The position numbers were made by a program, and so were the translations under genes. This document shows, one piece after another, positions 438 through 60,992 of a stretch of 64,000 bases of DNA. The notes beneath the pieces are model-generated. The model saw only the letters and a program-made list of their open reading frames with translations. It made no database searches and was not told the DNA's origin. The stretch is taken from the IMG/VR virus record IMGVR_UViG_3300023202_000383, positions 62,001 through 126,000 of that record. One strand, written 5' to 3'. Position 1 is the first letter of the stretch; every line of letters starts with the position of its first letter.

Positions 438-1324
438 ATGAGATTGGGCTATTTATATTCTGTGACTCTCATGGAAGCCGACCTCATGGTCGGATTTGGT
501 CCACAAATCCAAAAAACATCCAAAGAACTAGGATTGCTCCAGAAGAGTTAGCTGGGTTTATTCAATCAATAAAAGATGAAACAAAAGTATATATCCCATG
601 GCTTATCAAACAGATTTCTCCATCAAAAGCGGGCAGTCAAAGATTGCGTCTTCCAGAAGACATACCAAGAATAATCAATGTCTTGCGGTCATTTAATAAA
701 TTAAAGACCAAACTGCCACATAAAGACATCAATAAATACACTTTTAGAGATTTAGAAGCGCAAGTAGATAAATTGAGCGGTACCGCTATAAAATCTAAAC
801 GCCAAAAAGCGAAAGATATAAAAGCTGAAGGAGTAGAGGATTACAGGGAAAATGCTTCATGGAAGATAATTAAAGTGACTACCGCTAAAGCAGCTTGTAT
901 TTTGTCTAAGAACACTAAGTGGTGCACAAGCGATGAAGGTGTAGCGGCAGGATATCTCCCGCTATATATCGTGTTTAAGAAAAGTGGCAGCAAGTTGATC
1001 AAAGTTGCACAGTATGATGCTGATTTTGATCAGGTTATGGATGTAAAAGATAATCCGATAGATCAAGTACCAAAATCATTGGCTGAATTGATGAAACCTC
1101 AATCGCCTAGTCCTGAACAAGCATATCGCTATGCTAAAGATGTCATCAAGGGAAGATGGCCCGATGGAGAAGAAACGATAAAGAAAGATCCTAAATGGGC
1201 TTATCACTATGCTCTCGATGTCATCAAGGGAAGATGGCCTGAGGCTGAGGAAACGATAAAGAATGATCCTGAATGGGCTTATCACTATGCTCTCGATGTC
1301 ATCAAGGGAAGATGGCCTGAGTGA
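438..1324 (+). CDS. Phage protein with KWCTS motif and C-terminal 26-aa AYxYAxDVIKGRWP repeats; apparent frameshift near 530
   Basis: ORF 644..1324 stays open back to 437 with no ATG; the ATG 438 ORF in another frame joins plausibly at KELG/IAPEELAG; three C-terminal repeats. Confidence 0.55.
1111..1321 (+). repeat. 78-bp tandem coding repeat, about 2.7 copies
   Basis: TGTCATCAAGGGAAGATGGCC occurs at 1141, 1219 and 1297; copies 2 and 3 are near-identical. Confidence 0.9.
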
Positions 1325-37529: not shown

Positions 37530-38780
37530 ATGGAGAATTTTACTATGGATAGGTATGATCCGAAACTTATCGCTGAGCAGATGGATTTTGAACCAGAAGA
37601 TGTCGATGTCGATGTGAATGACGTCCCTTCTGACGTCCCTTCTGACGTCCCTTCTGACGTCCCTTCTGATGTCGCTGGCGATATGGATTATGATGCGCCT
37701 GATGACTATGATGTTCATGATGAAGGCGAAGATGAAGGCCCAGTTGTTCATCTTACAAGAGAGCTTTTAAAACAGCTAGTCCAGGAAGTCATGGAATTAG
37801 AACTTGGCGACTGGGTTGGCGACAGAGATCTCGCCAGTGAATTAGCAGACAAGGCCGAAGAGCTTTGTTGCGGCGATGAAGATGAAGCGGTCGATTTGAC
37901 CACTGAACATCTTGATGACCTTAAATCTGTCTTGTCGCCAGGAGATGAAGACGAAGATGAAGACGAAGATGGGGGCGAAGCTGGTGATGGTGGCGAAGAG
38001 GGCGACGAAGCTAGTGATGATGAGGGCGAAGATGACGGCGGCGATGATGAAGATTATGAAGACGACATGAAGAAGGGTGACTATGATAAGGACCCCCATG
38101 CTGCAGCCCTAGGCGGCAAGGGCGATGAGGAGGATCCACATGCCGCAGCATTAGGGCGAAAAGAAGATAAGGACGAGCAGGGCAACCCAATCCAGGAGAT
38201 GGCTGATTCCATGTGTGCTATTCCTGGGTGCCCGCATGAGTGTGCATGTAAGCAATGCTGCTGCTGCGAATCACATTGCGAATGTTTAGAGCAGGTTGGT
38301 CCTGGTGCTGAGATGATGGCTGGCGATTATGAAGAGGCGGACATGGAGGCTCATTGTGCTGCCGGTGATTATGAAAAAGATGAGGAGAGATATAGCGAGT
38401 CTCATAAGAAGCTCATCGGTCGCAACAAAGAAGTTGTGGAAGAGGACAAGAAAGAGGCCAAGCCTGAACCAAGAATCAAGCCACTAACTGAAAGTGGTAA
38501 AATTCGTCATATCATATCAGAGAGCGTTTCTAAAGTCGTCAAAAACATATCTGAATCGTACGATATGAAGTTTGAAGACACTAAAAATCCAGACATTGTA
38601 AAAATAGTGTCTGAGCACAAAGAATCTCAGCTTAAGTTAATCGAAGAGAATATCAACCTTGTTCTTGAAAGCAAGAGCTGGCTCATGAGTCGGGATGCAG
38701 AAAAGCTTATTGGATACAATAAATGCAGCCTTATCAAGCCAGAGAAGGCTAAGCATTATTACTTGTTGTTCGATAAGTAA
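37530..38780 (+). CDS. Highly acidic low-complexity protein (probable prohead core/internal protein)
   Basis: D/E-rich; CAAAGATA upstream; Cys cluster; DPHAAALG x2. Confidence 0.6.
   Translation: MENFTMDRYDPKLIAEQMDFEPEDVDVDVNDVPSDVPSDVPSDVPSDVAGDMDYDAPDDYDVHDEGEDEGPVVHLTRELLKQLVQEVMELELGDWVGDRDLASELADKAEELCCGDEDEAVDLTTEHLDDLKSVLSPGDEDEDEDEDGGEAGDGGEEGDEASDDEGEDDGGDDEDYEDDMKKGDYDKDPHAAALGGKGDEEDPHAAALGRKEDKDEQGNPIQEMADSMCAIPGCPHECACKQCCCCESHCECLEQVGPGAEMMAGDYEEADMEAHCAAGDYEKDEERYSESHKKLIGRNKEVVEEDKKEAKPEPRIKPLTESGKIRHIISESVSKVVKNISESYDMKFEDTKNPDIVKIVSEHKESQLKLIEENINLVLESKSWLMSRDAEKLIGYNKCSLIKPEKAKHYYLLFDK
37619..37666 (+). repeat. 12-bp tandem repeat x4 (DVPS)
   Basis: TGACGTCCCTTC x4. Confidence 0.95.
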
Positions 38781-42747: not shown

Positions 42748-45738
42748 ATGGCTTGGCAACTATTTGATAGAATTAGAGGGTTTACTAGATCTGCTGGTAT
42801 ATATCAGCAGGACCGCCTGCTTCAAGACCAGCCTTCTATAGATAAGTTAATTTCTGGCAATCAATTTCTAGACTTCAATCAGCAGCAAGCACTTCTAGAC
42901 CAGACCAATCTTCAAATAAATAGACTTGAGCGATACAAAGATTATGACCAGATGGATGAAGTTGGCGAAGCGTCGCTCGCGTTAGACCTATATGCTGATG
43001 AGTCATCGATAGTTGACCCAGAATACAAGCATACTGTCATTATAAAGTCTGCACATTCTTCTGTAAAACATGCTCTTGAAGACCTGTTTCACAATCGAAT
43101 ATTAATAGATAGAATAATCAGGGCGATGGTGCGGTACTTGGTAAAGTACGGCGATGCTCCGTTTGAAATCATACCAACGACTGATAGAGATGGCGTTGCG
43201 ACCATCAAATTCATAAATGTTTATAACTTCACTAGGGTTGAAACGAAGTATGGTGATCTAGTTGGCTTCTTCCATCAAGATGAGATGGCGGCTGAGCCGA
43301 CGTTTCTGCACCCGTGGCAGGTTGTGCATTTTAGGCTTACTGAGTATGGTAATATTTATCACCCTTACGGGCGGTGCGCCGAATTCGGCACTAGGGTTTC
43401 CACGCCATCCGGATATAAGAATATTGAAGATTTTAAACCTGGGGATGATGTATACTGCTTTGCTAACAACAAATTAGTCCCGACTAAGGTGGTTGCTGCA
43501 TGTCATTCTGGCGAGAAGAAAATATTAAAAATTAAGACGCGGCATTTTGAAAATAGATGTAGCGAAAATCATCCAGTAATGGTTCGGCAGTGGAATCTGA
43601 AGCCGTTTAAGTATGGCAAGAAGTGGTTCGCTGATCTTGTCTATAAGAGAGCTGACGAAGTTGAGATTGGCGATGAATTAGTTGTTCCTAGAACACCTGA
43701 ATCTAATAATTATAATATTCTTGGCAATATCGGCAGCATGAACGTTGTCGCTGATGAAAAATTCGCGAGATTATTCGGATTCTTGATTGGCGATGGATGG
43801 TTGATGCGCAGGCATGGCAAAAACACCGGTGTTGAATTTGCTAATGGAGTAGACTCGAATCTTAATAAATATTATGGAGAATTATTGGATAATTATTCTC
43901 CTAATAAGATAAGGTCTTATAAGAAAAATGGGTCTCAAAGCACTTTAGTAGAAGATGCGACACATACATGCTCGAAAGATTTTGCTGATTTCTTAGAGAA
44001 AAAATGTGGATTCATTCAGGGTTCATACAATAAGAGAATCCCGCAGTGGGTATATTCTAGCCCAATGTCGGTCCAGAAGGAATTTATCCGTGGGTTGATT
44101 GATTCGGATGGTAGTAGTAATGTTGACGAATGGAAGTGTGAAAGGCTGCAGCTTGAGCTATCAAATTATGAATTAATAAAAGATGTTAAGATGCTTCTGC
44201 ATAAAATGGGTCTCAAGTGTGGGCAGATTCTAAAAAGAAACCGAGACGAAGACACTACTATAATCCATAGCCAAGAGTATGATAGACTCGATTCGTGGAC
44301 AATATACTTTTATAGATCAGACTTATTTGAAGCTGCTGGAAGACATGTGCAGCATTTAGCTGGTTCTCGTGGGTACAACTCTCGCAAGAAGGAATCTTCT
44401 AAATTTGGCAAAGATGTGATTTTTGAACCAGTAGTGTCTATAGAAGATGGCGGAACAAAGCCAACTGCTGATATTCAAGTTGATCACCCAGCATCAAACT
44501 TCGTTGCTGATGGTGTTGTTGTTCATAATTCTATCTTAGAGGGCGGAAGAAAGGCGTTCAAACAGTTGCGCCTTATGGAAGATGCAGCCCTTATATATAG
44601 AATCACGAGGGCTCCGGAGAAGAGGTTGTTCTCGATACCTGTTGGTAATATTCCAACTAAAGAAGTGCCTGAATATATTCAGGCTATCGCTCGGCAGTTC
44701 AAGAATCAACGATTCTACGATCCAAGGACGGGCGAATTTAACGAGAGGTATTCGCCGCTTATTCAAGAGGATGATTTCTTCTTGCCCAAGCGACCTGATG
44801 GAAGTGGCCCTGCAATTGACATACTCAAAGGTGCAGAGAATCTTGATCAGATAGCCGATATAGACTATTTCAAGAAGAAGATGGTCGCGCCTATGCATAT
44901 CCCATTTAGCAGGGTTGGCATAGGTGAAGGTTCTGGTGAAAATAGCGAGAAGTCTTTGGCATCTGAACATTCTCAATTTGCCAAGGCGGTTCAGTACGTC
45001 CAAAGAGAGATCGCCATAGGCTTACAGAAGGTCGCTATATGCCACCTGGCTATGGCTGGATATACTGCAAAGCAGATTAAAGATTTCTCGATTACGATGA
45101 CCGCCACTAATGCTATCGATGAATTATATAGAATAGAAACATGGTCTGGCAGGACCAGGGTCATGGCCGATCTCAAGGACCTTGGTTGGTTCCCGGACGT
45201 GTGGATTGTCACGAGATTTACGGATCTTAGCCCGGACGAGATTCAAGAACTCAAGACGATGGAGTCTCAGCTTGGAAGTGATGAAGGGGTGGATGAAGAG
45301 GCTCTTGGTCTTGGGGGAGGGGGAGGCGGAGGCGGTGGGATAGATGATCTGCTTGGCGCAGAAGAGGGCGAAGGTCTTGATGAGCTTGAAGGCCTTGAAG
45401 CCGAAGGAGAGGGTGGAGAAGATGGCGAGGCTGAGGATTTAGAGGATCTTGGTCTTGGCGAGAAATCTATGTATAATGCATATAAGGAAAAGAAAGTTCT
45501 GCAAGAACACAAGTTGCAGAGAAAGCGTAGAATAATAAAGGAATTCGTAGAGAAGATAAGAAACATGGGTATGAATAATGGGGGCGAGAAAGCTAATGAG
45601 ACATCTGCCTACGAAAATCTTAGGATGGAGAATGAGTTTGACGGACTAGAATCCAAGTCGAATATTGGTGGAGGTGTTTTAGAAGAAGATATTAAGAGCG
45701 AAGCCAAAGAAGAATATAAGAAAATATTGAGTGAATAA
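42748..45738 (+). CDS. Portal protein (gp20-like) with intein
   Basis: ALDLYADES, PYGR|SILE..KQLRLMEDAALIYRITRAPEKR, EDDFFLP, DIDYFKKK. Confidence 0.95.
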   Translation: MAWQLFDRIRGFTRSAGIYQQDRLLQDQPSIDKLISGNQFLDFNQQQALLDQTNLQINRLERYKDYDQMDEVGEASLALDLYADESSIVDPEYKHTVIIKSAHSSVKHALEDLFHNRILIDRIIRAMVRYLVKYGDAPFEIIPTTDRDGVATIKFINVYNFTRVETKYGDLVGFFHQDEMAAEPTFLHPWQVVHFRLTEYGNIYHPYGRCAEFGTRVSTPSGYKNIEDFKPGDDVYCFANNKLVPTKVVAACHSGEKKILKIKTRHFENRCSENHPVMVRQWNLKPFKYGKKWFADLVYKRADEVEIGDELVVPRTPESNNYNILGNIGSMNVVADEKFARLFGFLIGDGWLMRRHGKNTGVEFANGVDSNLNKYYGELLDNYSPNKIRSYKKNGSQSTLVEDATHTCSKDFADFLEKKCGFIQGSYNKRIPQWVYSSPMSVQKEFIRGLIDSDGSSNVDEWKCERLQLELSNYELIKDVKMLLHKMGLKCGQILKRNRDEDTTIIHSQEYDRLDSWTIYFYRSDLFEAAGRHVQHLAGSRGYNSRKKESSKFGKDVIFEPVVSIEDGGTKPTADIQVDHPASNFVADGVVVHNSILEGGRKAFKQLRLMEDAALIYRITRAPEKRLFSIPVGNIPTKEVPEYIQAIARQFKNQRFYDPRTGEFNERYSPLIQEDDFFLPKRPDGSGPAIDILKGAENLDQIADIDYFKKKMVAPMHIPFSRVGIGEGSGENSEKSLASEHSQFAKAVQYVQREIAIGLQKVAICHLAMAGYTAKQIKDFSITMTATNAIDELYRIETWSGRTRVMADLKDLGWFPDVWIVTRFTDLSPDEIQELKTMESQLGSDEGVDEEALGLGGGGGGGGGIDDLLGAEEGEGLDELEGLEAEGEGGEDGEAEDLEDLGLGEKSMYNAYKEKKVLQEHKLQRKRRIIKEFVEKIRNMGMNNGGEKANETSAYENLRMENEFDGLESKSNIGGGVLEEDIKSEAKEEYKKILSE
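43375..44529 (+). mobile_element. Intein with LAGLIDADG endonuclease (385 aa)
   Basis: R|CAEFGT, CSENHP, FGFLIGDG, RGLIDSDG, NFVADGVVVHN|S. Confidence 0.95.
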
Positions 45739-53600: not shown

Positions 53601-55151
53601 ATGAGCCACGTGCAGAACACGATTACTGAGACCGCAGACGCCCACAAGGAGTCTGTATTGGTTGAGGCACGTAGGAATACTATGGTCAAGAAGTGGTCGC
53701 CAGTCCTTGCCAAGTGCAAGGAGGTTAACAGAAAGAAGTATGGCCTCATGGCCCAGCTTCTTGAGAACCAGCATCAAGCTTGGAACCCAGAGGGTGGCAA
53801 CTCGATGCTGTTCGAGGATGTTACCACAACTGGCAACGTAGCGGACTTTACCCGCTTCGCACTTCCTCTGATTCGTAAGTCCTACCAGCGTCTGATTGCC
53901 GACAATCTTGTTGGCGTTCAGCCGATGACTCAGCCAGCATCGCTGATCTTCTATATTCGTTATCGTTACGCCATCTCCAAGGGCCAGACGGTTGCGGGTA
54001 CGCAGATCATGCGTCAAAACACCAGCCAGCAGTTCGCTAAGCAGAACGGCTGGGCACTCGATCCGTTCTACTCTTCGCAGTACGTACGTAACGAGGAAGC
54101 CACAGTCGCTGCCGGTACTGGCACTGAGACAGTCACCAAGGTGCTGGATCAGCGTCCGATCTTGGCTGGTACAGTGGTTGTTAACGTTTACGAAGCCGAT
54201 CAGTTCAACCAGCAGTGCGATCTTGACGATGCGTTCCTGCAGGTTACATATGATTCGGACGGCAACGTTGACACCGTTCTTCTCAACTCCGACGACACTG
54301 ATGTAACAGCGGGCCTGGTCGTTGACGAGATGTCCTCGTCCTTCGACGGTTCCACTGGTACTGTCACGCTTGTCGTCACAGGTGCATTCCCAGCGGGTGC
54401 CCGTGCTTTCGTTGACTACGAGTACGACCTCGAAGCCAACCCATTCCAGCCAGAGCTGACTCTGAGCATCGACAGCGACTCGGTCGCCGCCGTTACTCGT
54501 AAGCTCAAGACCGCTTGGTCGCTGGAGGCCGCACAGGACCTCAAGGCTGTCCATAACATCGACGCAGAGGCAACTCTGACCGATCTTATGGCCGACGAAA
54601 TGGTCGCGGAAATCGATCGTGAAATCATCAACGATCTCATCATCGCCGCAGCCATTAGGGCTAACCACAACTTCGCCACCGCAGCCGGTGCCTCGGTCAA
54701 CTTTACTGACCGTAACATCGCCCTGCTCTACAAGGTGCTCGAAGTTGCCAACATCATTCACAGAGCCACCTTGCGTGGTCCTGCCAACTGGATGGTCACC
54801 TCGGCTGACATCGCTTCGAAGTTCGAGCAGCTGAATGACTTCCGTGGCAGCGACGCTCTGGCGGATGAGGGAATCGATATCGGCATCATGAATGCCGGTA
54901 CGATTCAGGGTAAGCTGAAGCTGTACAAGGATCCGCTGTTCCCGAACTGCCGAATCCTGATGGGTTATAAGGGTAATAGCGTCCTTGACGCTGGGTACTT
55001 CTATGCTCCGTACATTCCGCTTCTCAGCACTCCAACCGTGCTCGATCCTAACTCCTTTGTCCCGAACAAGGGTGTGATGACGAGATATGGTAAGAAGCTG
55101 ATAGAAGACGGTGGGCTCTACTATGGAACTGTTACCGTGTCCAATCTGTAA
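53601..55151 (+). CDS. Major capsid protein (gp23-like)
   Basis: KKWSPVL, LLENQ, VGVQPMTQP, TRKLKTAWSLEAAQDL, AEIDREII, GYFYAPYIPL, TRYG. Confidence 0.97.
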   Translation: MSHVQNTITETADAHKESVLVEARRNTMVKKWSPVLAKCKEVNRKKYGLMAQLLENQHQAWNPEGGNSMLFEDVTTTGNVADFTRFALPLIRKSYQRLIADNLVGVQPMTQPASLIFYIRYRYAISKGQTVAGTQIMRQNTSQQFAKQNGWALDPFYSSQYVRNEEATVAAGTGTETVTKVLDQRPILAGTVVVNVYEADQFNQQCDLDDAFLQVTYDSDGNVDTVLLNSDDTDVTAGLVVDEMSSSFDGSTGTVTLVVTGAFPAGARAFVDYEYDLEANPFQPELTLSIDSDSVAAVTRKLKTAWSLEAAQDLKAVHNIDAEATLTDLMADEMVAEIDREIINDLIIAAAIRANHNFATAAGASVNFTDRNIALLYKVLEVANIIHRATLRGPANWMVTSADIASKFEQLNDFRGSDALADEGIDIGIMNAGTIQGKLKLYKDPLFPNCRILMGYKGNSVLDAGYFYAPYIPLLSTPTVLDPNSFVPNKGVMTRYGKKLIEDGGLYYGTVTVSNL

Positions 55152-55180
55152 TAATTTTTACGGAACACGGTATTAGCCAT

Positions 55181-55217
55181 AAAAAGGCGGCTTGGAGACA
55201 AGCCGCCTTTCTTTTTT
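55181..55217 (+). terminator. Rho-independent terminator after the capsid gene
   Basis: AAAGGCGGCTT-ggagac-AAGCCGCCTTT followed by a T-tract. Confidence 0.85.
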
Positions 55218-55270
55218 ATATAATAACAATATATTAGAGACATATCATCATTACTTTTTAGGAATATAAA

Positions 55271-57355
55271 ATGCCGAAATTTAAACAAACTCTACCAGCC
55301 AAACAAATTGAAAAGTGGATACAAAATGGAATGTCAATGAGTGAAGTTGCGAGGCGACTAAATAAAAGTGTTGGTAGCATATCTAATTTCTGCAAAAAGC
55401 ATAGTATAAAATCTAATTTTTCTAGTAAAGCCGTTAATATTCCGGTTGATGAAGCCTATAAACTATATCAAAATGGCGTAAGTATGTATAAGTTAGGAGA
55501 GAAGTATAACCGCCCGCCGTCTCTCGTGAAAAAGAAGCTATTAAAGAAGTATCCAGATCTTTGTATTAGAGATATGGATTCTGCAAAAAGACCAGAATTA
55601 CTCAATGACCCAATAATGCTCGCCGATGAAATGAAGTGCAAGTCATTAAGGCGCATCGCTAAAGAATTAAAAGTTAAAGTTCAAACTGTTAGCAGCGCTG
55701 CAAAAAGGCTTGGGCTAACTGAACTTATAAGAGATCAACTTGTTACAGATAAGCCTGAAGATATTCGGTTGCTATATGAATCTGGACTTAGTCTCACGAG
55801 TTTAGCGGACATCTATAATACTTATCCAACAACGATATCGAATATTATAAAAAGAGCGAAAGGGGCGACTAGACCAAGCGGGGGTGTGATACGTGATTCT
55901 AAATATGATGAATTAAATGATAAGGAATGGTTAAAACACCAATATCATGATCTTGATAGATCTATGGCGTTTATAGCGGCGTGGCTTGGTACGTCTATTG
56001 GGAATGTGTCTCACGCCCTTGACAAACATGGTATTTTAAAGAAACCAAAGAGAAAAGTATACTCTAAATTACGTAGGAAAATTTCGAAACATACGCTCAC
56101 CACCAAATGGGGAACTTGGAAATTGCAGAGCAAGGCCGAGATTGAATTTGTTAATAATATTCCTCAATCCGCTAAATTTGTAGAGTATGAACCTGAAACT
56201 TTAGAATATAATGGTGTTGAATACACACCTGATTTTAGAGTAGATGGTGAATATATTGAGATAAAACCTCCATCATATGCTTGCGAGCCAGGTGTAGATA
56301 GACAAAGATTCGTTAAACAGTTGTGCATTGCTAATAAGAACAACATAGCAATCAAGCCGTGGTATAACGGAAAGTTTTTGGATTATAAAGAAATTGAAGA
56401 CATTGATAAATATTTTGCTTTAAATTGGAAAGTTGTGTTTGATTCATCAAATGTATGCTTCGAATTTTTAAAATCATATGGTTTTAGGCCAGTAGAATGG
56501 AATAAAGATTTTTTGCTCGGCGCACTAAATAAATTACATTCTATTCCAGAAAATCAATGGCTTAACGCCAATTATCAGTGTTCTAAAATAATTGATATGA
56601 TTAGACATTTTAATCCACACTTCTGGTCTTCAACTCACAAAGGTTACAACACTATCAAGATGGCATTTGAGCCTGGTAATCAGACTATACTTAAACAGGC
56701 CTTAGAAAGTTTATGGGAGAAGAAGAGAAATATTAATATTTATGGTCTCGTTCGGATAATAGCGAAGAAGTTTAAAGATTTTGCTATGGTTAGTATTTTT
56801 AAACCGTGGGTCGCTAAGCACGTATATAATAAATTACTTCCGGATGGCGGTATTGTTATAGACCCATGCATGGGTTGGGGCGGTAGATTTTTGGGTACTA
56901 TAGGATATGATATAAAGTATATCGGGTATGACCTAAATAACAATGCGGTGCAATCAAATACTAATTTGGTCGAATTTGTAGGATCTTTGTCGATGCACGA
57001 TCCTGATTTTTCCGTTGCTGATTCTTCTGTCATTGATTGGCCAGATGGTGATTTATTGTTTACTAGTCCACCATATGATGATACCGAATATTATGATGGA
57101 TTAAAAGAACAGTGTCGAGATACGACGCCGATTTATGAGAATATTATGAGGTTTAAGGAGAAGATTGCTTTGAACATCCCTAAGCGTCATACGGATAAGT
57201 GTGTCGAGATTGCTGAGAAACATGGTCGGAAGTTAATTGATATGTATAAGATGAGGACTTCTAATTTTATGGGGAGGCGTGAGAGTACGTTTGAGCCGAT
57301 TCTTATATTTGATAAGCTTCGTGCCAATGGCGTCTTGCCGCTGCGTGTGGTTTAG
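55271..57355 (+). CDS. Multi-HTH + PD-(D/E)XK nuclease + amino (N6A/N4C) DNA methyltransferase fusion
   Basis: About five HTH-like units; YEP..YTPDF..YIEIKP; VIDPCMGWGGR..YIGYD motif I; LLFTSPPY motif IV. Confidence 0.75.
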   Translation: MPKFKQTLPAKQIEKWIQNGMSMSEVARRLNKSVGSISNFCKKHSIKSNFSSKAVNIPVDEAYKLYQNGVSMYKLGEKYNRPPSLVKKKLLKKYPDLCIRDMDSAKRPELLNDPIMLADEMKCKSLRRIAKELKVKVQTVSSAAKRLGLTELIRDQLVTDKPEDIRLLYESGLSLTSLADIYNTYPTTISNIIKRAKGATRPSGGVIRDSKYDELNDKEWLKHQYHDLDRSMAFIAAWLGTSIGNVSHALDKHGILKKPKRKVYSKLRRKISKHTLTTKWGTWKLQSKAEIEFVNNIPQSAKFVEYEPETLEYNGVEYTPDFRVDGEYIEIKPPSYACEPGVDRQRFVKQLCIANKNNIAIKPWYNGKFLDYKEIEDIDKYFALNWKVVFDSSNVCFEFLKSYGFRPVEWNKDFLLGALNKLHSIPENQWLNANYQCSKIIDMIRHFNPHFWSSTHKGYNTIKMAFEPGNQTILKQALESLWEKKRNINIYGLVRIIAKKFKDFAMVSIFKPWVAKHVYNKLLPDGGIVIDPCMGWGGRFLGTIGYDIKYIGYDLNNNAVQSNTNLVEFVGSLSMHDPDFSVADSSVIDWPDGDLLFTSPPYDDTEYYDGLKEQCRDTTPIYENIMRFKEKIALNIPKRHTDKCVEIAEKHGRKLIDMYKMRTSNFMGRRESTFEPILIFDKLRANGVLPLRVV

Positions 57356-57571
57356 TGTGGTGTCTGTTCGGTCCTGCCGCTGCGTGGGATCAGGTAAGGT
57401 AAAGTTTTGCCGCTGCGTGGAGTCAGGTATAGTTCAGTTAGATCATGTTTTGCCGCTGCGTGTGGTCATGTGCAGTTGAGTGCTGTCCTGCCGTTGTGTG
57501 TGGTGTAGTGGCATTCTGTTCCGCCGCTGCGTTGCGTACAGTCCTGTTTCGTCACGTCAAGTCCTGCCGCT
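57332..57571. repeat. Array of GCCGCTGC repeats separated by GTNNN pentamer runs (candidate ncRNA/guide array)
   Basis: Octamer at 57337, 57376, 57409, 57452, 57490 (GCCGTTGT), 57523 and 57566 (partial); spacers of 31, 25, 35, 30, 25 and 35 nt. Confidence 0.85.
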
Positions 57572-57810
57572 ATTTTTATCCATTGCTTTAATTCTTCATC
57601 AAGAATTGGGTCGCCGTGTTGTGGGTCTGCCATATCGATCTCCTTGTATTGCGACATCAATGTCAGTTGCATTTGTTTTCTGAAATTAGTATTTCTTGCC
57701 ACTTGTCTGTGTGTTATTAAAATGACTACAGTTGGGTGCAGATAACTATTGTGGAAAGCTAACGACAAGCTGCGAGATTCGGATCTAGAACCAATAAATA
57801 TTAAAGATAA

Positions 57811-58179: not shown

Positions 58180-58776
58180 ATGTTAGAAGACGAAAATATT
58201 AGATTCATCCATGTACCAAAGACTGGTGGGTCGTCTGTCTCATGTGTCTTGTTTGGCGATGGCAAAAGGGGAACTGGTCATCAGCCGGTTTGGCAATGTC
58301 CTCCGAAGTTAAACCAAAATCAAGTTACTGTGGCGTTTGTGCGCAACCCATTAGATCGTTTGGTATCGACTTATTCGTACCTTCTTGCTGATGGGCAAAA
58401 CAATAGAGACAAATCCGATAGCCAGAAGTTTATAAAACCGCATGGGGGATTTAAACAATTTGTTGAGGCTTTAAGTCAAGATCCGGATTTTTATTTCGAG
58501 CAGCAGCATTTGAAACCACAGTTATATTACCTGTCTGAATCTGGTAACAATGTCTGTGCCAATATAGACTGGTTGTGTAGATATGAGAGATTTGACGCAG
58601 ATTTACGCAGGCTATGTCTTGCATTCGGCAAGGAATACCGAAATATCAGAATAAATGCCTCAAAGCATGAGCATCATATCTATTATTATGATGATAAAAC
58701 AGCTGATTTAGTGATGCAGGTATATCATCAGGACTTTGAAGCTTTCGGATATCCTACTTGCCTAAAGACGGGTTAA
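58180..58776 (+). CDS. Sulfotransferase family 2 protein
   Basis: FIHVPKTGGSSV (5'-PSB), FVRNPLDRLVSTY (3'-PB), HLKPQ, DFEAFGY. Confidence 0.85.
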   Translation: MLEDENIRFIHVPKTGGSSVSCVLFGDGKRGTGHQPVWQCPPKLNQNQVTVAFVRNPLDRLVSTYSYLLADGQNNRDKSDSQKFIKPHGGFKQFVEALSQDPDFYFEQQHLKPQLYYLSESGNNVCANIDWLCRYERFDADLRRLCLAFGKEYRNIRINASKHEHHIYYYDDKTADLVMQVYHQDFEAFGYPTCLKTG

Positions 58777-59881: not shown

Positions 59882-60201
59882 CTGATAACGAACGATGGCT
59901 AGTTAATACACTGCGTCAGCTTGATGAACTCAATACTGAGATGAACCAAGCCCGTAAGAGAGGTAAGAATACTGGTATTCCTGGGATGCGCGGCGGAGAT
60001 TGGCTTGAAGCTAGTGGATGGGAGGAAGTGGACGTAGAGAGTCCATATCGCTGGAAGTCGCCTGAAAATGGCACTGTTTTGTGCTTTGAGAGAGCTTTCC
60101 ATCAAGAACGGAATAGAATACGAAGAGATATGGAATTGCTACTTGAGCAGTTTAGAGTAAAATACCCTTTAAATGGGTCTTCTGCAAAGGTTCAAAAATG
60201 A
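59878..60201 (+). CDS. Hypothetical protein
   Basis: ATGA coupling on both sides. Confidence 0.55.
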
Positions 60202-60992
60202 GACAATATCTAGAAATGCTTGACTATGTTTTAAATTGCGGAGAAAAAAGGCCAGATCGCACTGGCACAGGAACAATCTCTGCGTTTGGTGGACAGATGT
60301 TTTTCGATTTGAATGAAGGATTCCCGCTGGTAACCACTAAGAAAGTCCATTTAAAATCGGTTATTCATGAACTTTTGTGGATGCTTAGTGGAAATACCAA
60401 TACAAAATATCTGAACGACAATGGTGTGACAATATGGGATGAATGGGCTGATGATAACGGCGATTTAGGTCCAATATATGGGCACCAATGGAGGTCTTGG
60501 CCTGATGGCGAGAATGTGTTTGATCAAATTGCGAATGCACTGTATTCGATCAAGACAAATCCATATTCTAGAAGACATATAATCTCTGCGTGGAATGTTG
60601 GTCAACTTGGTGAGATGGCTTTGGCACCTTGCCATGTAATGTTTCAGTTTTATGTATCTGTCGATGGGACTCTTAGCTGTCAGATGTATCAAAGGTCAGC
60701 GGATTTGTTTTTGGGTGTACCATTCAATATTGCTTCTTATGCTATGCTCACACATATGATGGCACAAGTGACTGGATTAAAGCCCGGCCACTTCATTCAC
60801 GTGCTTGGCGATGTTCATATCTATAGTAACCATGTTGAGCAGGCCGAGTTGCAGCTTTCTAGAGAACCGAGACAATTACCTAAGCTCAAGCTCAATCCCG
60901 ATATTATATCGATTGATGATTTTACGTATGATGATATCTCTGTTGAAGGTTATGACCCACACCCGACAATAAAAGCATCAATATCTGTTTGA
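60198..60992 (+). CDS. thyA: Thymidylate synthase
   Basis: [56 protein letters not shown]. Confidence 0.97.

What the first reader, a model, noticed from the sequence alone, without database searches (positions are those of the whole stretch)
57332..57571. Non-coding array: GCCGCTGC repeats with spacers built from GTNNN pentamers
Seen: seven octamer repeats. The spacers parse almost perfectly into 5-7 pentamers with a fixed GT (occasionally AT) and three variable bases, e.g. GTGGA GTCAG GTATA GTTCA GTTAG ATCAT GTTTT and GTTGC GTACA GTCCT GTTTC GTCAC GTCAA GTCCT. One spacer has an extra base. Period 5 does not fit coding, spacer lengths differ in steps of 5, and the variable bases are not copies of one another, so simple slippage does not explain it. 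It is not CRISPR (8-bp repeat, no cas genes). Inference: a processed RNA array in which the fixed dinucleotides are bound by a polymerising protein and the variable bases carry non-contiguous guide information; alternatively a half-helical-turn-phased DNA protein-binding array. No obvious effector gene is adjacent, and the transcribed strand is unknown.
Basis: partly seen in the sequence, partly recalled or inferred. Interest (0 to 1): 0.85.

Follow-up and report, generated by a model that had tools for sequence, protein, structure and literature searches.

The report
Orphan VIPR guide-RNA array in jumbo phage
This non-coding stretch is an array of the recently described phage VIPR guide RNAs, in which pentamers have a fixed part held by a Cas7-like protein and two free letters that spell a gapped DNA target; here it stands alone in a T4-like jumbo phage with no gene for that protein nearby.

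Summary
Seven GCCGCT-type cores at 57337-57573 are separated by spacers of 25, 30 or 35 nt (one of 31). The spacers consist of 36 pentamers that all start with R-T (33 GT, 3 AT). Nothing else in the window looks like it.

The same architecture occurs in more than 35 unrelated viral and metagenome contigs of 47-63% GC. There it flanks a ~250-aa gene of an unnamed family with no Pfam or PHROG match. Its AlphaFold model (pLDDT 90.7) matches chains of type III-A Csm and type VII CRISPR effector complexes. In 30 of 30 loci that gene lies on the strand opposite GCCGCT. The RNA sense therefore reads AGCGGC NN (xAY NN)k.

This fits VIPR (Viral Interference Programmable Repeat), described in 2026 preprints. 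One Vipr RAMP protomer binds each pentamer and the two free bases read DNA with a 1-nt skip. Non-canonical GAC/NN and CAC/NN arrays next to Vipr-like folds are already reported.

The window array has no detectable Vipr from 57 kb before it to 24.9 kb after it, so it is a solo array. Expression could not be tested. One of six decoded guides matches a relative's portal gene 14/14 (1 of 300 shuffles). This is a new member of a known kind.

The parts
57337..57573 (-). Whole VIPR-type array: seven cores and six guide tracts. The RNA sense is inferred to be the minus strand, reading AGCGGC NN (xAC NN)k.
   Evidence: Orientation is inferred from 30 of 30 related loci where the RAMP gene lies opposite the GCCGCT strand.
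57566..57573 (-). Core 7 (plus strand GCCGCTAT). It is the first AGCGGC in the RNA sense.
57531..57565 (-). Tract T1: 7 pentamers. Decoded dinucleotides in the RNA sense are AG TT GT GA AG TG GC, plus GC from the core.
   Evidence: An exact 1-nt-skip scan of IMG/VR gave 5 unrelated hits, which is chance level.
57523..57530 (-). Core 6 (GCCGCTGC).
57498..57522 (-). Tract T2: 5 pentamers.
57490..57497 (-). Core 5, degenerate (GCCGTTGT; AACGGC in the RNA sense).
57460..57489 (-). Tract T3: 6 pentamers. Its decoded pattern AGxAGxTCxTGxATxCAxGC matches the portal gene of a related phage 14/14.
57452..57459 (-). Core 4 (GCCGCTGC).
57417..57451 (-). Tract T4: 7 pentamers.
   Evidence: An exact scan of IMG/VR gave 12 unrelated hits, which is chance level.
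57409..57416 (-). Core 3 (GCCGCTGC).
57384..57408 (-). Tract T5: 5 pentamers.
57376..57383 (-). Core 2 (GCCGCTGC).
57345..57375 (-). Tract T6: 6 pentamers with a 1-nt insertion that breaks the phase once.
57337..57344 (-). Core 1 (GCCGCTGC). It lies inside the last codons of the plus-strand 694-aa ORF, which ends at 57355.
57466..57633 (-). Short minus-strand ORF. An AAGGAG Shine-Dalgarno sits at 57640-57645 and the ATG at 57631-57633. Twenty-one codons lie outside the array, then the frame runs into it. It is probably not a real protein. It may be a leftover start of the small accessory gene that precedes such arrays elsewhere, or simply the 5' leader of the RNA.
   Evidence: A gene caller extended it to 78 aa. 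It has no family match.
44661..44680 (+). The phage's own portal-gene site, homologous to the T3 match in relatives. It matches 11 of 14, below the 80% cut-off used in the VIPR papers.

Best explanation
The region is a VIPR-type vrRNA array of the non-canonical xAY/NN class.

Inferred mechanism: it is transcribed from the minus strand. The RNA is a run of five-base units. In each unit a purine-pyrimidine pair (A-C here), together with the base before it, forms the scaffold gripped by one protomer of a Vipr protein, a stand-alone Cas7-like RAMP that polymerises along the RNA. The two remaining free bases are presented for pairing. Read with one skipped target base per unit (NNxNNx...), the free dinucleotides specify a double-stranded DNA site, which the filament occupies to silence a rival mobile element.

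The hexamer AGCGGC is two scaffold-like triplets, AGC and GGC, with no free dinucleotide between them. It punctuates the array into six short guides of 6-8 dinucleotides.

In this phage the array is solo. No Vipr gene lies within 57 kb on one side or 24.9 kb on the other. It would therefore have to use a Vipr made elsewhere in the 332-kb genome or by a co-resident phage or prophage. That is how solo vrRNAs of satellites and VIPR-null phages were reported to work.

Shown: the grammar of the array, its identity with arrays that flank RAMP genes, and the strand rule in those loci. Inferred: transcription, processing at the cores, loading, the 1-nt-skip code for this class, and the biological target.
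For: 1. Grammar. All 36 pentamers start R-T on the plus strand, which is A-Y in the RNA sense. Spacers step by 5 nt.

2. Same architecture elsewhere. Pattern scans found arrays with GCCGCT, two free bases and (RYcNN)k in viral contigs and in 28 of 120 metagenome hits, with up to 47 units. Over 1854 pentamers the RNA-sense logo is N N g(45%) A(78%)/G(16%) C(88%)/T(12%). The last position is 100% pyrimidine and the two N positions are near uniform.

3. Protein partner. A ~250-aa gene lies next to or between the arrays. Of the 28 metagenome arrays, 21 have it in the locus; the rest are short or cut. In 30 of 30 loci it is on the strand opposite GCCGCT.

4. Fold. The family has at least 243 metagenome members and no Pfam or PHROG match. 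The AlphaFold model has pLDDT 90.7. Foldseek gives probability 1.0, with E-values down to 1.5e-7, to ~190-290-aa chains of type III-A Csm and type VII effector complexes. It also hits a 194-aa viral protein named Cas system-associated RAMP superfamily protein, E 5e-12. hhalign to SUSP1 Vipr is weak (E 0.017) but collinear through helix-1 and the glycine-rich loop.

5. Literature. VIPR consists of a Vipr RAMP, a small accessory gene and period-5 GGY/NN vrRNAs, mostly in phages (10.64898/2026.04.26.720920). One protomer binds per repeat and the Y pocket excludes purines (10.64898/2026.04.26.720927). Non-canonical GAC/NN and CAC/NN arrays next to Vipr-like folds are reported (10.64898/2026.10.21.760802). 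Solo vrRNAs occur in VIPR-null phages (10.64898/2026.10.15.759431). I confirmed the GGYNN tracts co-oriented with vipr in SUSP1 itself.

6. Folding. The minus-strand RNA folds no better than shuffles (z +1.2), as expected for a guide tract held open by protein.

7. Target. Guide T3 matches a relative's portal gene 14/14 under the 1-nt-skip rule only. Skips of 0, 2 and 3 give at best 12/14. One of 300 shuffled guides does as well, and the phage's own site scores 11/14.
Against: No Vipr homologue was found in the window or in the next 24.9 kb, by tblastn, family HMM, hhalign or a G-loop motif.

No RNA-seq run holding this sequence was listed, so neither strand nor processing is shown.

No sigma-70-like promoter was found on the minus strand upstream of the array. 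Both flanking genes are on the plus strand, so read-through would produce the opposite strand.

Five of six guides have no better-than-chance match. Exact scans of IMG/VR for T1 and T4 gave 5 and 12 unrelated hits.

The T3 match has three weaknesses. Its skipped bases fall on codon position 2, not the wobble position reported for SUSP1 targets. Its last dinucleotide (GC) is constant in five of the six tracts of this array. With six guides tested, the family-wise probability is only about 0.02-0.05.

The scaffold's first base is fully degenerate here. One core is degenerate and one tract has a phase-breaking insertion, so decay after loss of the protein gene is possible.

The guides are shorter (6-8 units) than the 9-16 units of characterised vrRNAs, and there is no 40-60-nt 3' tail.
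Confidence: 0.8

Rival explanations
1. The array is a decaying relic of a VIPR locus. It arrived by horizontal transfer, the vipr and accessory genes were lost, and it now has no function.
For: No Vipr or accessory gene is nearby. One core is degenerate, the terminal core is GCCGCTAT, and one tract has a 1-nt insertion. The array has 55% GC in a 38-41% GC genome. It is absent from 79 relatives, including those that share the upstream gene. Lopez et al. describe a single ancestral vipr-vap1 deletion that left orphan arrays.
Against: All 36 pentamers still keep R-T and five of seven cores are exact. That is hard to reconcile with neutral decay unless the loss was very recent. In the published case the orphan arrays are functional and redirect other elements' Vipr (10.64898/2026.10.15.759431).
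Confidence: 0.13
2. The array is a DNA-level element, such as iterons, a centromere-like site or a packaging site. A DNA-binding protein recognises GCCGCT and contacts GT steps every half helical turn.
For: In other phages, arrays lie on both sides of one gene (L138), which resembles iteron-flanked initiator genes. The core is a fixed hexamer. No transcription data exist.
Against: The partner protein has a RAMP (RNA-recognition-motif) fold with a glycine-rich loop, not a DNA-binding fold. Orientation relative to that gene is strictly one-way in 30 of 30 loci. The period is exactly 5 with two free positions, which is the published RNA grammar. Unit lengths of 33-43 bp are not helical-repeat multiples.
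Confidence: 0.04
3. The array is protein-coding or a structured-RNA element: the 55-78-aa minus-strand ORF, a CRISPR mini-array, or terminator hairpins.
For: A gene caller placed a 78-aa ORF over it. There is a good Shine-Dalgarno and ATG at 57631-57645. Two weak terminator-like hairpins lie on the plus strand.
Against: Period 5, and unit lengths of 33, 38, 39 and 43 nt, are incompatible with a reading frame. The ORF has no family match. Neither strand folds better than shuffles, with z +1.2 and +0.2. Rfam gives no hit on the array. An 8-nt repeat with no cas genes is not CRISPR.
Confidence: 0.03

Closest known systems
[quoted passage not shown]
   Same: Period-5 units with three constrained and two free positions. 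The dominant triplets in the RNA sense are GAC, AAC, CAC and TAC. A Vipr-like RAMP fold is encoded next to such arrays in related loci.
   Different: That paper reports about ten repeats per array. Here the tracts are 3-11 units (5-7 in the window), punctuated by AGCGGC into arrays of up to 47 units. The window copy has no Vipr-like gene nearby. Whether the AGCGGC-punctuated loci are among its 21 clusters could not be checked, because figures are not held.
Canonical type II VIPR of Escherichia phage SUSP1 (10.64898/2026.04.26.720920; 10.64898/2026.04.26.720927)
   Same: Scaffold/NN pentamers co-oriented with the RAMP gene, and arrays both upstream and downstream of it. The locus is minimal: a RAMP plus a small accessory gene. 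The third scaffold position is strictly pyrimidine. The system is carried by phages.
   Different: The scaffold is g-A-Y instead of G-G-Y. There is no 40-60-nt pseudoknot tail, only a 6-nt core. The guides are shorter. The partner RAMP is ~250 aa against 195 aa and has no significant sequence similarity.
Solo (orphan) vrRNAs of F5 satellites and VIPR-null SUSP1-family phages (10.64898/2026.10.15.759431)
   Same: An array with no vipr within 20 kb. The host is a phage whose relatives lack the array. One decoded guide points at a relative's essential gene.
   Different: Those solos are GGYNN with a recognisable SUSP1-type tail, and their cognate Vipr-bearing phage is known. Here the supplier of Vipr is unknown and the host is a 332-kb T4-like jumbo phage.
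Class 1 CRISPR crRNA-Cas7 backbone
   Same: A RAMP protomer polymerises on the guide RNA and its thumb periodically interrupts pairing. The short core is about the size of the 8-nt crRNA handle.
   Different: The period is 5 rather than 6. Only two bases per unit pair. There are no cas1, cas2 or other cas genes. In related loci, neighbouring units look like diverged copies of one another (L130, L142), which points to growth by duplication rather than spacer acquisition.

Membership tests
VIPR vrRNA array | Tandem 5-nt units with a constrained trinucleotide (GGY or a related consensus) alternating with two hypervariable bases, in at least 4 units | tested here: met
   There are six tracts of 5-7 units. 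A-Y in the RNA sense is kept in 36 of 36 pentamers. The class-wide logo is N N g A/G Y, with near-uniform N N, over 1854 pentamers. In the window itself the first scaffold base is not conserved.
VIPR vrRNA array | A vipr gene (stand-alone RAMP) adjacent to the array | tested here: not met
   No hit by tblastn, family HMM, hhalign or G-loop motif from the window start (-57 kb) to +24.9 kb. [quoted passage not shown] About 259 kb of the source contig was not examined, and a Vipr too divergent for sequence methods cannot be excluded.
VIPR vrRNA array | Arrays of the same sequence class are associated with a Vipr-like RAMP elsewhere | tested here: met
   Thirty loci have the ~250-aa RAMP next to AGCGGC/xAY-NN arrays, always co-oriented in the RNA sense. 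The RAMP fold is supported.
VIPR vrRNA array | A conserved 3' tail (a pseudoknot in type II) capping each repeat tract | tested here: not met
   Only a 6-nt core separates the tracts. No stable fold is present. The discovery paper describes other architectures, including staggered arrays in which one vrRNA ends where the next starts. The feature is therefore type-specific, and this may be that architecture. It could not be verified because figures are not held.
VIPR vrRNA array | Transcribed and processed into discrete small RNAs that co-purify with Vipr | not testable with these tools
   No RNA run was listed for this sequence. Only DNA runs hold it.
VIPR vrRNA array | Free dinucleotides match natural DNA targets under the 1-nt-skip rule, above chance | tested here: inconclusive
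   T3 scores 14/14 in the portal gene of L098, under skip 1 only, and 1 of 300 shuffles reaches that. The other five guides are at chance. T1 and T4 exact scans returned chance-level unrelated hits. A class-wide skip-rule test on 235 kb was uninformative.
Vipr protein family (for the ~250-aa partner in related loci) | Single-RRM RAMP with a glycine-rich loop and thumb, phage-encoded, in a minimal two-gene locus | tested here: met
   High-confidence model. Foldseek matches chains of type III-A Csm and type VII effector complexes and viral RAMPs. A C-terminal G-loop motif, GLGS(3-5 residues)GKF, is nearly invariant. A small accessory gene lies upstream in 10 loci. A direct structural comparison with solved SUSP1 Vipr was not possible, and sequence similarity is not significant.
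CRISPR array | Repeats of 23-50 nt, spacers free of internal periodicity, and cas genes | tested here: not met
   The core is 6-8 nt, the spacers have a strict period of 5, and no cas genes are present.

The most novel reading that the evidence does not exclude
AGCGGC-punctuated xAY/NN arrays may be a distinct, tail-less VIPR architecture. They would produce many very short guides (6-8 dinucleotides) from one transcript. In this reading, a T4-like jumbo phage carries a solo copy to borrow the Vipr of a co-resident element and aim it at rivals. One guide is aimed at the portal gene of close relatives while sparing the phage's own allele.
Probability: 0.25. Interest if true: 0.6.

Novelty: new member of a known kind. 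Interest (0 to 1): 0.42.

Why it matters
VIPR was described only in 2026 and has been characterised in two closely related systems. This locus, and the more than 35 sister arrays found along the way, add several things:
- They show the same period-5 grammar with an A in place of the second scaffold G.
- They show a six-base punctuation mark in place of a long structured tail.
- They reveal a large unnamed RAMP family of at least 243 proteins, all hypothetical.
- They extend solo arrays from SUSP1-like coliphages and their satellites to an environmental T4-like jumbo phage.

If the solo array is active, array-only hijacking of another element's guide-binding protein would be a general tactic in phage-phage conflict. 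The T3/portal pair would then give a concrete, testable guide-target example. For annotation, the 78-aa ORF called over this region should be dropped.

Tried and rejected
- Near-identity search of the phage collection with 2.5 kb around the array gave no match.
- Rfam at a permissive threshold gave only two sub-threshold L20-leader matches near 55.1-55.3 kb, unrelated to the array.
- The first collection scan, with the window's 11-mer repeated, mostly returned 12-nt coding repeats (GCCGCTGCGTGG and similar) in high-GC phages. These are unrelated.
- Eighty capsid relatives (70-80% aa identity; 79 after excluding the window's own contig, L032) were searched within about 10 kb of the capsid gene for any period-5 array. 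None was found.
- The genome-collection scan returned 64 single-match loci that are chance hits or 15-nt coding repeats. The only possible exception is a short array at the end of an Eisenbacteria MAG contig.
- A literature search with the core sequence led nowhere.
- Ideas considered and dropped: Chi-site array (AGCGG), primase recognition sites (GTC/GTT), a TRAP-like RNA-binding ring, iterons, and a pac site. None explains the strict two free positions plus the RAMP partner.
- No RNA sequencing run was listed. DNA runs show no variation.
- Promoter scans do not settle the strand.
- Extending the T3 match into neighbouring tracts, checked by eye, gave no continuation.
- A class-wide test of skip rules with 239 guides against 235 kb of held loci showed no difference between rules or from shuffles. 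The database was too small and not the right target set.
- The A1 profile against PDB sequences does not reach SUSP1 Vipr.
Full report
**Observation**

The plus strand of 57337-57573 carries seven copies of a GCCGCT core. Five are exact GCCGCTGC, one is GCCGTTGT and one is GCCGCTAT. They are separated by 31, 25, 35, 30, 25 and 35 nt. The spacers parse into 36 pentamers, 33 starting GT and 3 starting AT. The 31-nt spacer has a single extra T.

GT-to-GT distances peak sharply at 5, 10 and 15. A scan for in-phase GT finds hits only here in 64 kb, on one strand, and almost never in shuffles. The array is identical in three DNA runs and in two JGI assemblies from different samples, so it is not an assembly artefact.

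**Setting**

The window is part of a 332-kb metagenomic contig, of which IMG/VR holds 256 kb. It belongs to a distant T4-like jumbo phage with about 38-41% GC.

The array lies 2.2 kb downstream of the gp23-type capsid gene. Before it is a 694-aa HTH/endonuclease/methyltransferase-like ORF, whose last codons contain the first core. After it is a block of small plus-strand genes that includes a sulfotransferase.

None of 79 relatives with 70-80% identical capsids has any period-5 array within about 10 kb of the capsid gene. Twenty-two of them share part of the upstream gene. The genes downstream of the array are also unique to this phage.

**Relatives of the array**

A two-unit pattern (GCCGCT, two free bases, three in-phase GT, a gap, then GCCGCT NN GT) pulled out arrays of the same design from unrelated contigs of 47-63% GC. 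They came from viral contigs, a Logan contig and 28 of 120 metagenome hits. Some have more than 40 units.

They were essentially absent from 185,579 representative bacterial and archaeal genomes.

Across 450 cores and 1854 pentamers, the plus-type strand reads R-Y-c-N-N. On the other strand this is N N g(45%) A(78%)/G(16%) C(88%)/T(12%). The last position is pyrimidine without exception, and the two N positions are close to uniform. Tracts hold 3-11 pentamers.

Neighbouring units in some arrays are diverged duplicates that keep the scaffold (L130, L142). The arrays therefore grow by duplication and are held by selection on the fixed positions.

**The partner protein**

All-against-all comparison of ORFs around these arrays found one shared ~250-aa protein and one shared small (75-110 aa) helical protein.

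- Family size: the larger protein belongs to a family of at least 243 metagenome proteins, none named and none with a Pfam or PHROG match. None occurs in GenBank phages.
- Fold: with a 50-sequence alignment, AlphaFold gives pLDDT 90.7.
- PDB matches: the top 50 listed Foldseek hits are all ~190-290-aa chains of type III Csm/Cmr and type VII CRISPR effector complexes, at probability 1.0.
- Viral matches: the best is a 194-aa protein named Cas system-associated RAMP superfamily protein.
- Motif: a C-terminal GLGS(3-5 residues)GKF motif is nearly invariant.

The gene sits beside or between the arrays. In 30 of 30 loci it is on the strand opposite GCCGCT. Read in the sense of the gene, the arrays are AGCGGC NN (xAY NN)k.

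**Identification**

A literature search surfaced four 2026 preprints on VIPR, Viral Interference Programmable Repeat.

- VIPR loci are mostly phage-borne. They consist of a stand-alone RAMP (Vipr), a small accessory gene and vrRNAs made of GGY/NN pentamers.
- One Vipr protomer binds each pentamer and hides the GGY, with a pocket that excludes purines at Y. The NN bases pair with DNA while every third target base is skipped.
- Seven types are described, with variant consensus sequences and array layouts. These include staggered arrays with no spacer between vrRNAs.
- A language-model survey reports 21 period-5 clusters with non-canonical triplets such as GAC/NN and CAC/NN next to Vipr-like folds.
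- Solo vrRNAs, lacking vipr within 20 kb, occur in satellites and VIPR-null phages and redirect other elements' Vipr.

I confirmed the canonical layout in phage SUSP1: GGYNN tracts co-oriented with vipr on both sides of the gene pair.

The class found here fits this description point by point, with g-A-Y in place of G-G-Y. The AGCGGC core reads naturally as two scaffold-type triplets (AGC, GGC) without an intervening NN. That also explains the 3-nt phase shift at each core.

**The window copy**

In the RNA sense (minus strand) it gives six tracts, T1-T6, of 6-8 dinucleotides each.

No Vipr homologue or accessory gene is detectable from the window start to 24.9 kb beyond the array. This was tested by tblastn, family HMM, profile comparison of all 150-330-aa ORFs, and a G-loop motif. 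By the published criterion the array is solo. About 259 kb of the contig remains unexamined.

A minus-strand start signal (AAGGAG, then ATG at 57631-57633) precedes the array. It opens a frame that merely runs into the array. Gene callers turned this into a 68-78-aa ORF. Period 5 rules out coding.

Neither strand folds better than shuffles. No RNA run was listed and promoter scans are uninformative. The strand is therefore inferred only from the 30 of 30 rule.

**Targets**

The six guides were scanned with skips of 0-3 against the window and against 1.04 Mb of relatives.

- Only T3 under the 1-nt skip gave a perfect match. It scores 14/14 in L098 and 13/14 in five further relatives at the homologous site. 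That site lies in the conserved core of the portal gene.
- The phage's own portal site scores 11/14.
- One of 300 shuffled guides does as well. For six guides this is about 0.02-0.05 family-wise.

Three caveats apply. The skipped bases fall on codon position 2, not on wobble positions. The differences among relatives lie at bases the guide reads. The last dinucleotide is constant in this array.

T1 and T4 have only chance-level exact hits in IMG/VR, in unrelated contigs. A class-wide skip-rule test was uninformative. Target evidence is suggestive at best.

**Verdict**

The element is a new member of a known kind: a solo, non-canonical (xAY/NN, AGCGGC-punctuated) vrRNA array in a T4-like jumbo phage. 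It may be active, borrowing a Vipr made elsewhere, or it may be a recent relic. The evidence favours the former only weakly.

Interest is moderate. The kind is very new, the sister loci define a large unnamed Vipr-like family with a tail-less array layout, and a concrete guide-target pair is available for testing. Nothing here lies outside the published framework.

Noticed in passing
window 42748-45738 (+): The portal gene is 996 aa. PHROG portal matches are split (residues 46-199 and 557-840) around a ~300-aa middle part that matches endonuclease and terminase-large-subunit families. This suggests an inserted intein or homing-endonuclease-like module.
   Followed up: partly
window 55271-57355 (+): A 694-aa ORF lies directly after the capsid gene. 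It has several N-terminal HTH units, a PD-(D/E)XK-like motif (YTPDF...EIKP), and a C-terminal part with methyltransferase-like motifs (DPCMGWGG, SPPY). The C-terminal part recurs downstream of the capsid gene in 22 relatives, the N-terminal part in 8.
   Followed up: partly
window 57466-57702 (-): Public gene calls place a 68-78-aa ORF over the array. Most of it is array sequence with period 5, so it is almost certainly a false gene call.
   Followed up: yes
window 55086-55262, both strands: Two mirror-image sub-threshold matches to the L20 leader model (28 bits against a gathering score of 58.7) lie just after the capsid gene. This is probably a long palindromic terminator rather than that leader.
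   Followed up: no
window 37599-38462: A dense cluster of 6-, 9-, 12- and 18-nt tandem repeats rich in GAT/GAA/GAC. It looks like a coding acidic low-complexity region.
   Followed up: no
window 1124-1321: A 78-nt tandem repeat with 2.5 copies at 90% identity. The period is a multiple of 3, so it is probably a repeated protein module.
   Followed up: no
window 58180-58776 and 60198-60992; L355 15893-16531, 16860-17756, 19476-20195: The variable region after the array carries two sulfotransferases, a thymidylate synthase, a polysaccharide pyruvyl transferase, a TylF-type methyltransferase and a Lar-like restriction-alleviation protein. This is a hyperplastic accessory region.
   Followed up: no
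L001-L031 (e.g. L014 6669-7084, L006, L013): Many high-GC viral contigs carry long coding arrays of 12-nt or 27-nt units that begin GCCGCTGCG (Ala-Ala-Ala-Trp-type repeats). They share the octamer with the finding by chance only.
   Followed up: partly
L137 958-1290 (-), and nine other loci listed: The small helical protein encoded just upstream of the arrays overlaps the first array units with its 3' end. In L137 it carries a C-terminal zinc ribbon. It is a candidate Vipr accessory (vap-like) protein with no family assignment.
   Followed up: partly
L213 (IMGVR_UViG_3300029908_000004, 215 kb, GC 0.47); L212 and L214: Three loci encode the same RAMP family but have few or no exact GCCGCT cores. 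L212 shows a degenerate array with GCCGCC, ACCGCT and GCCGCA cores, so the core varies within the family.
   Followed up: partly
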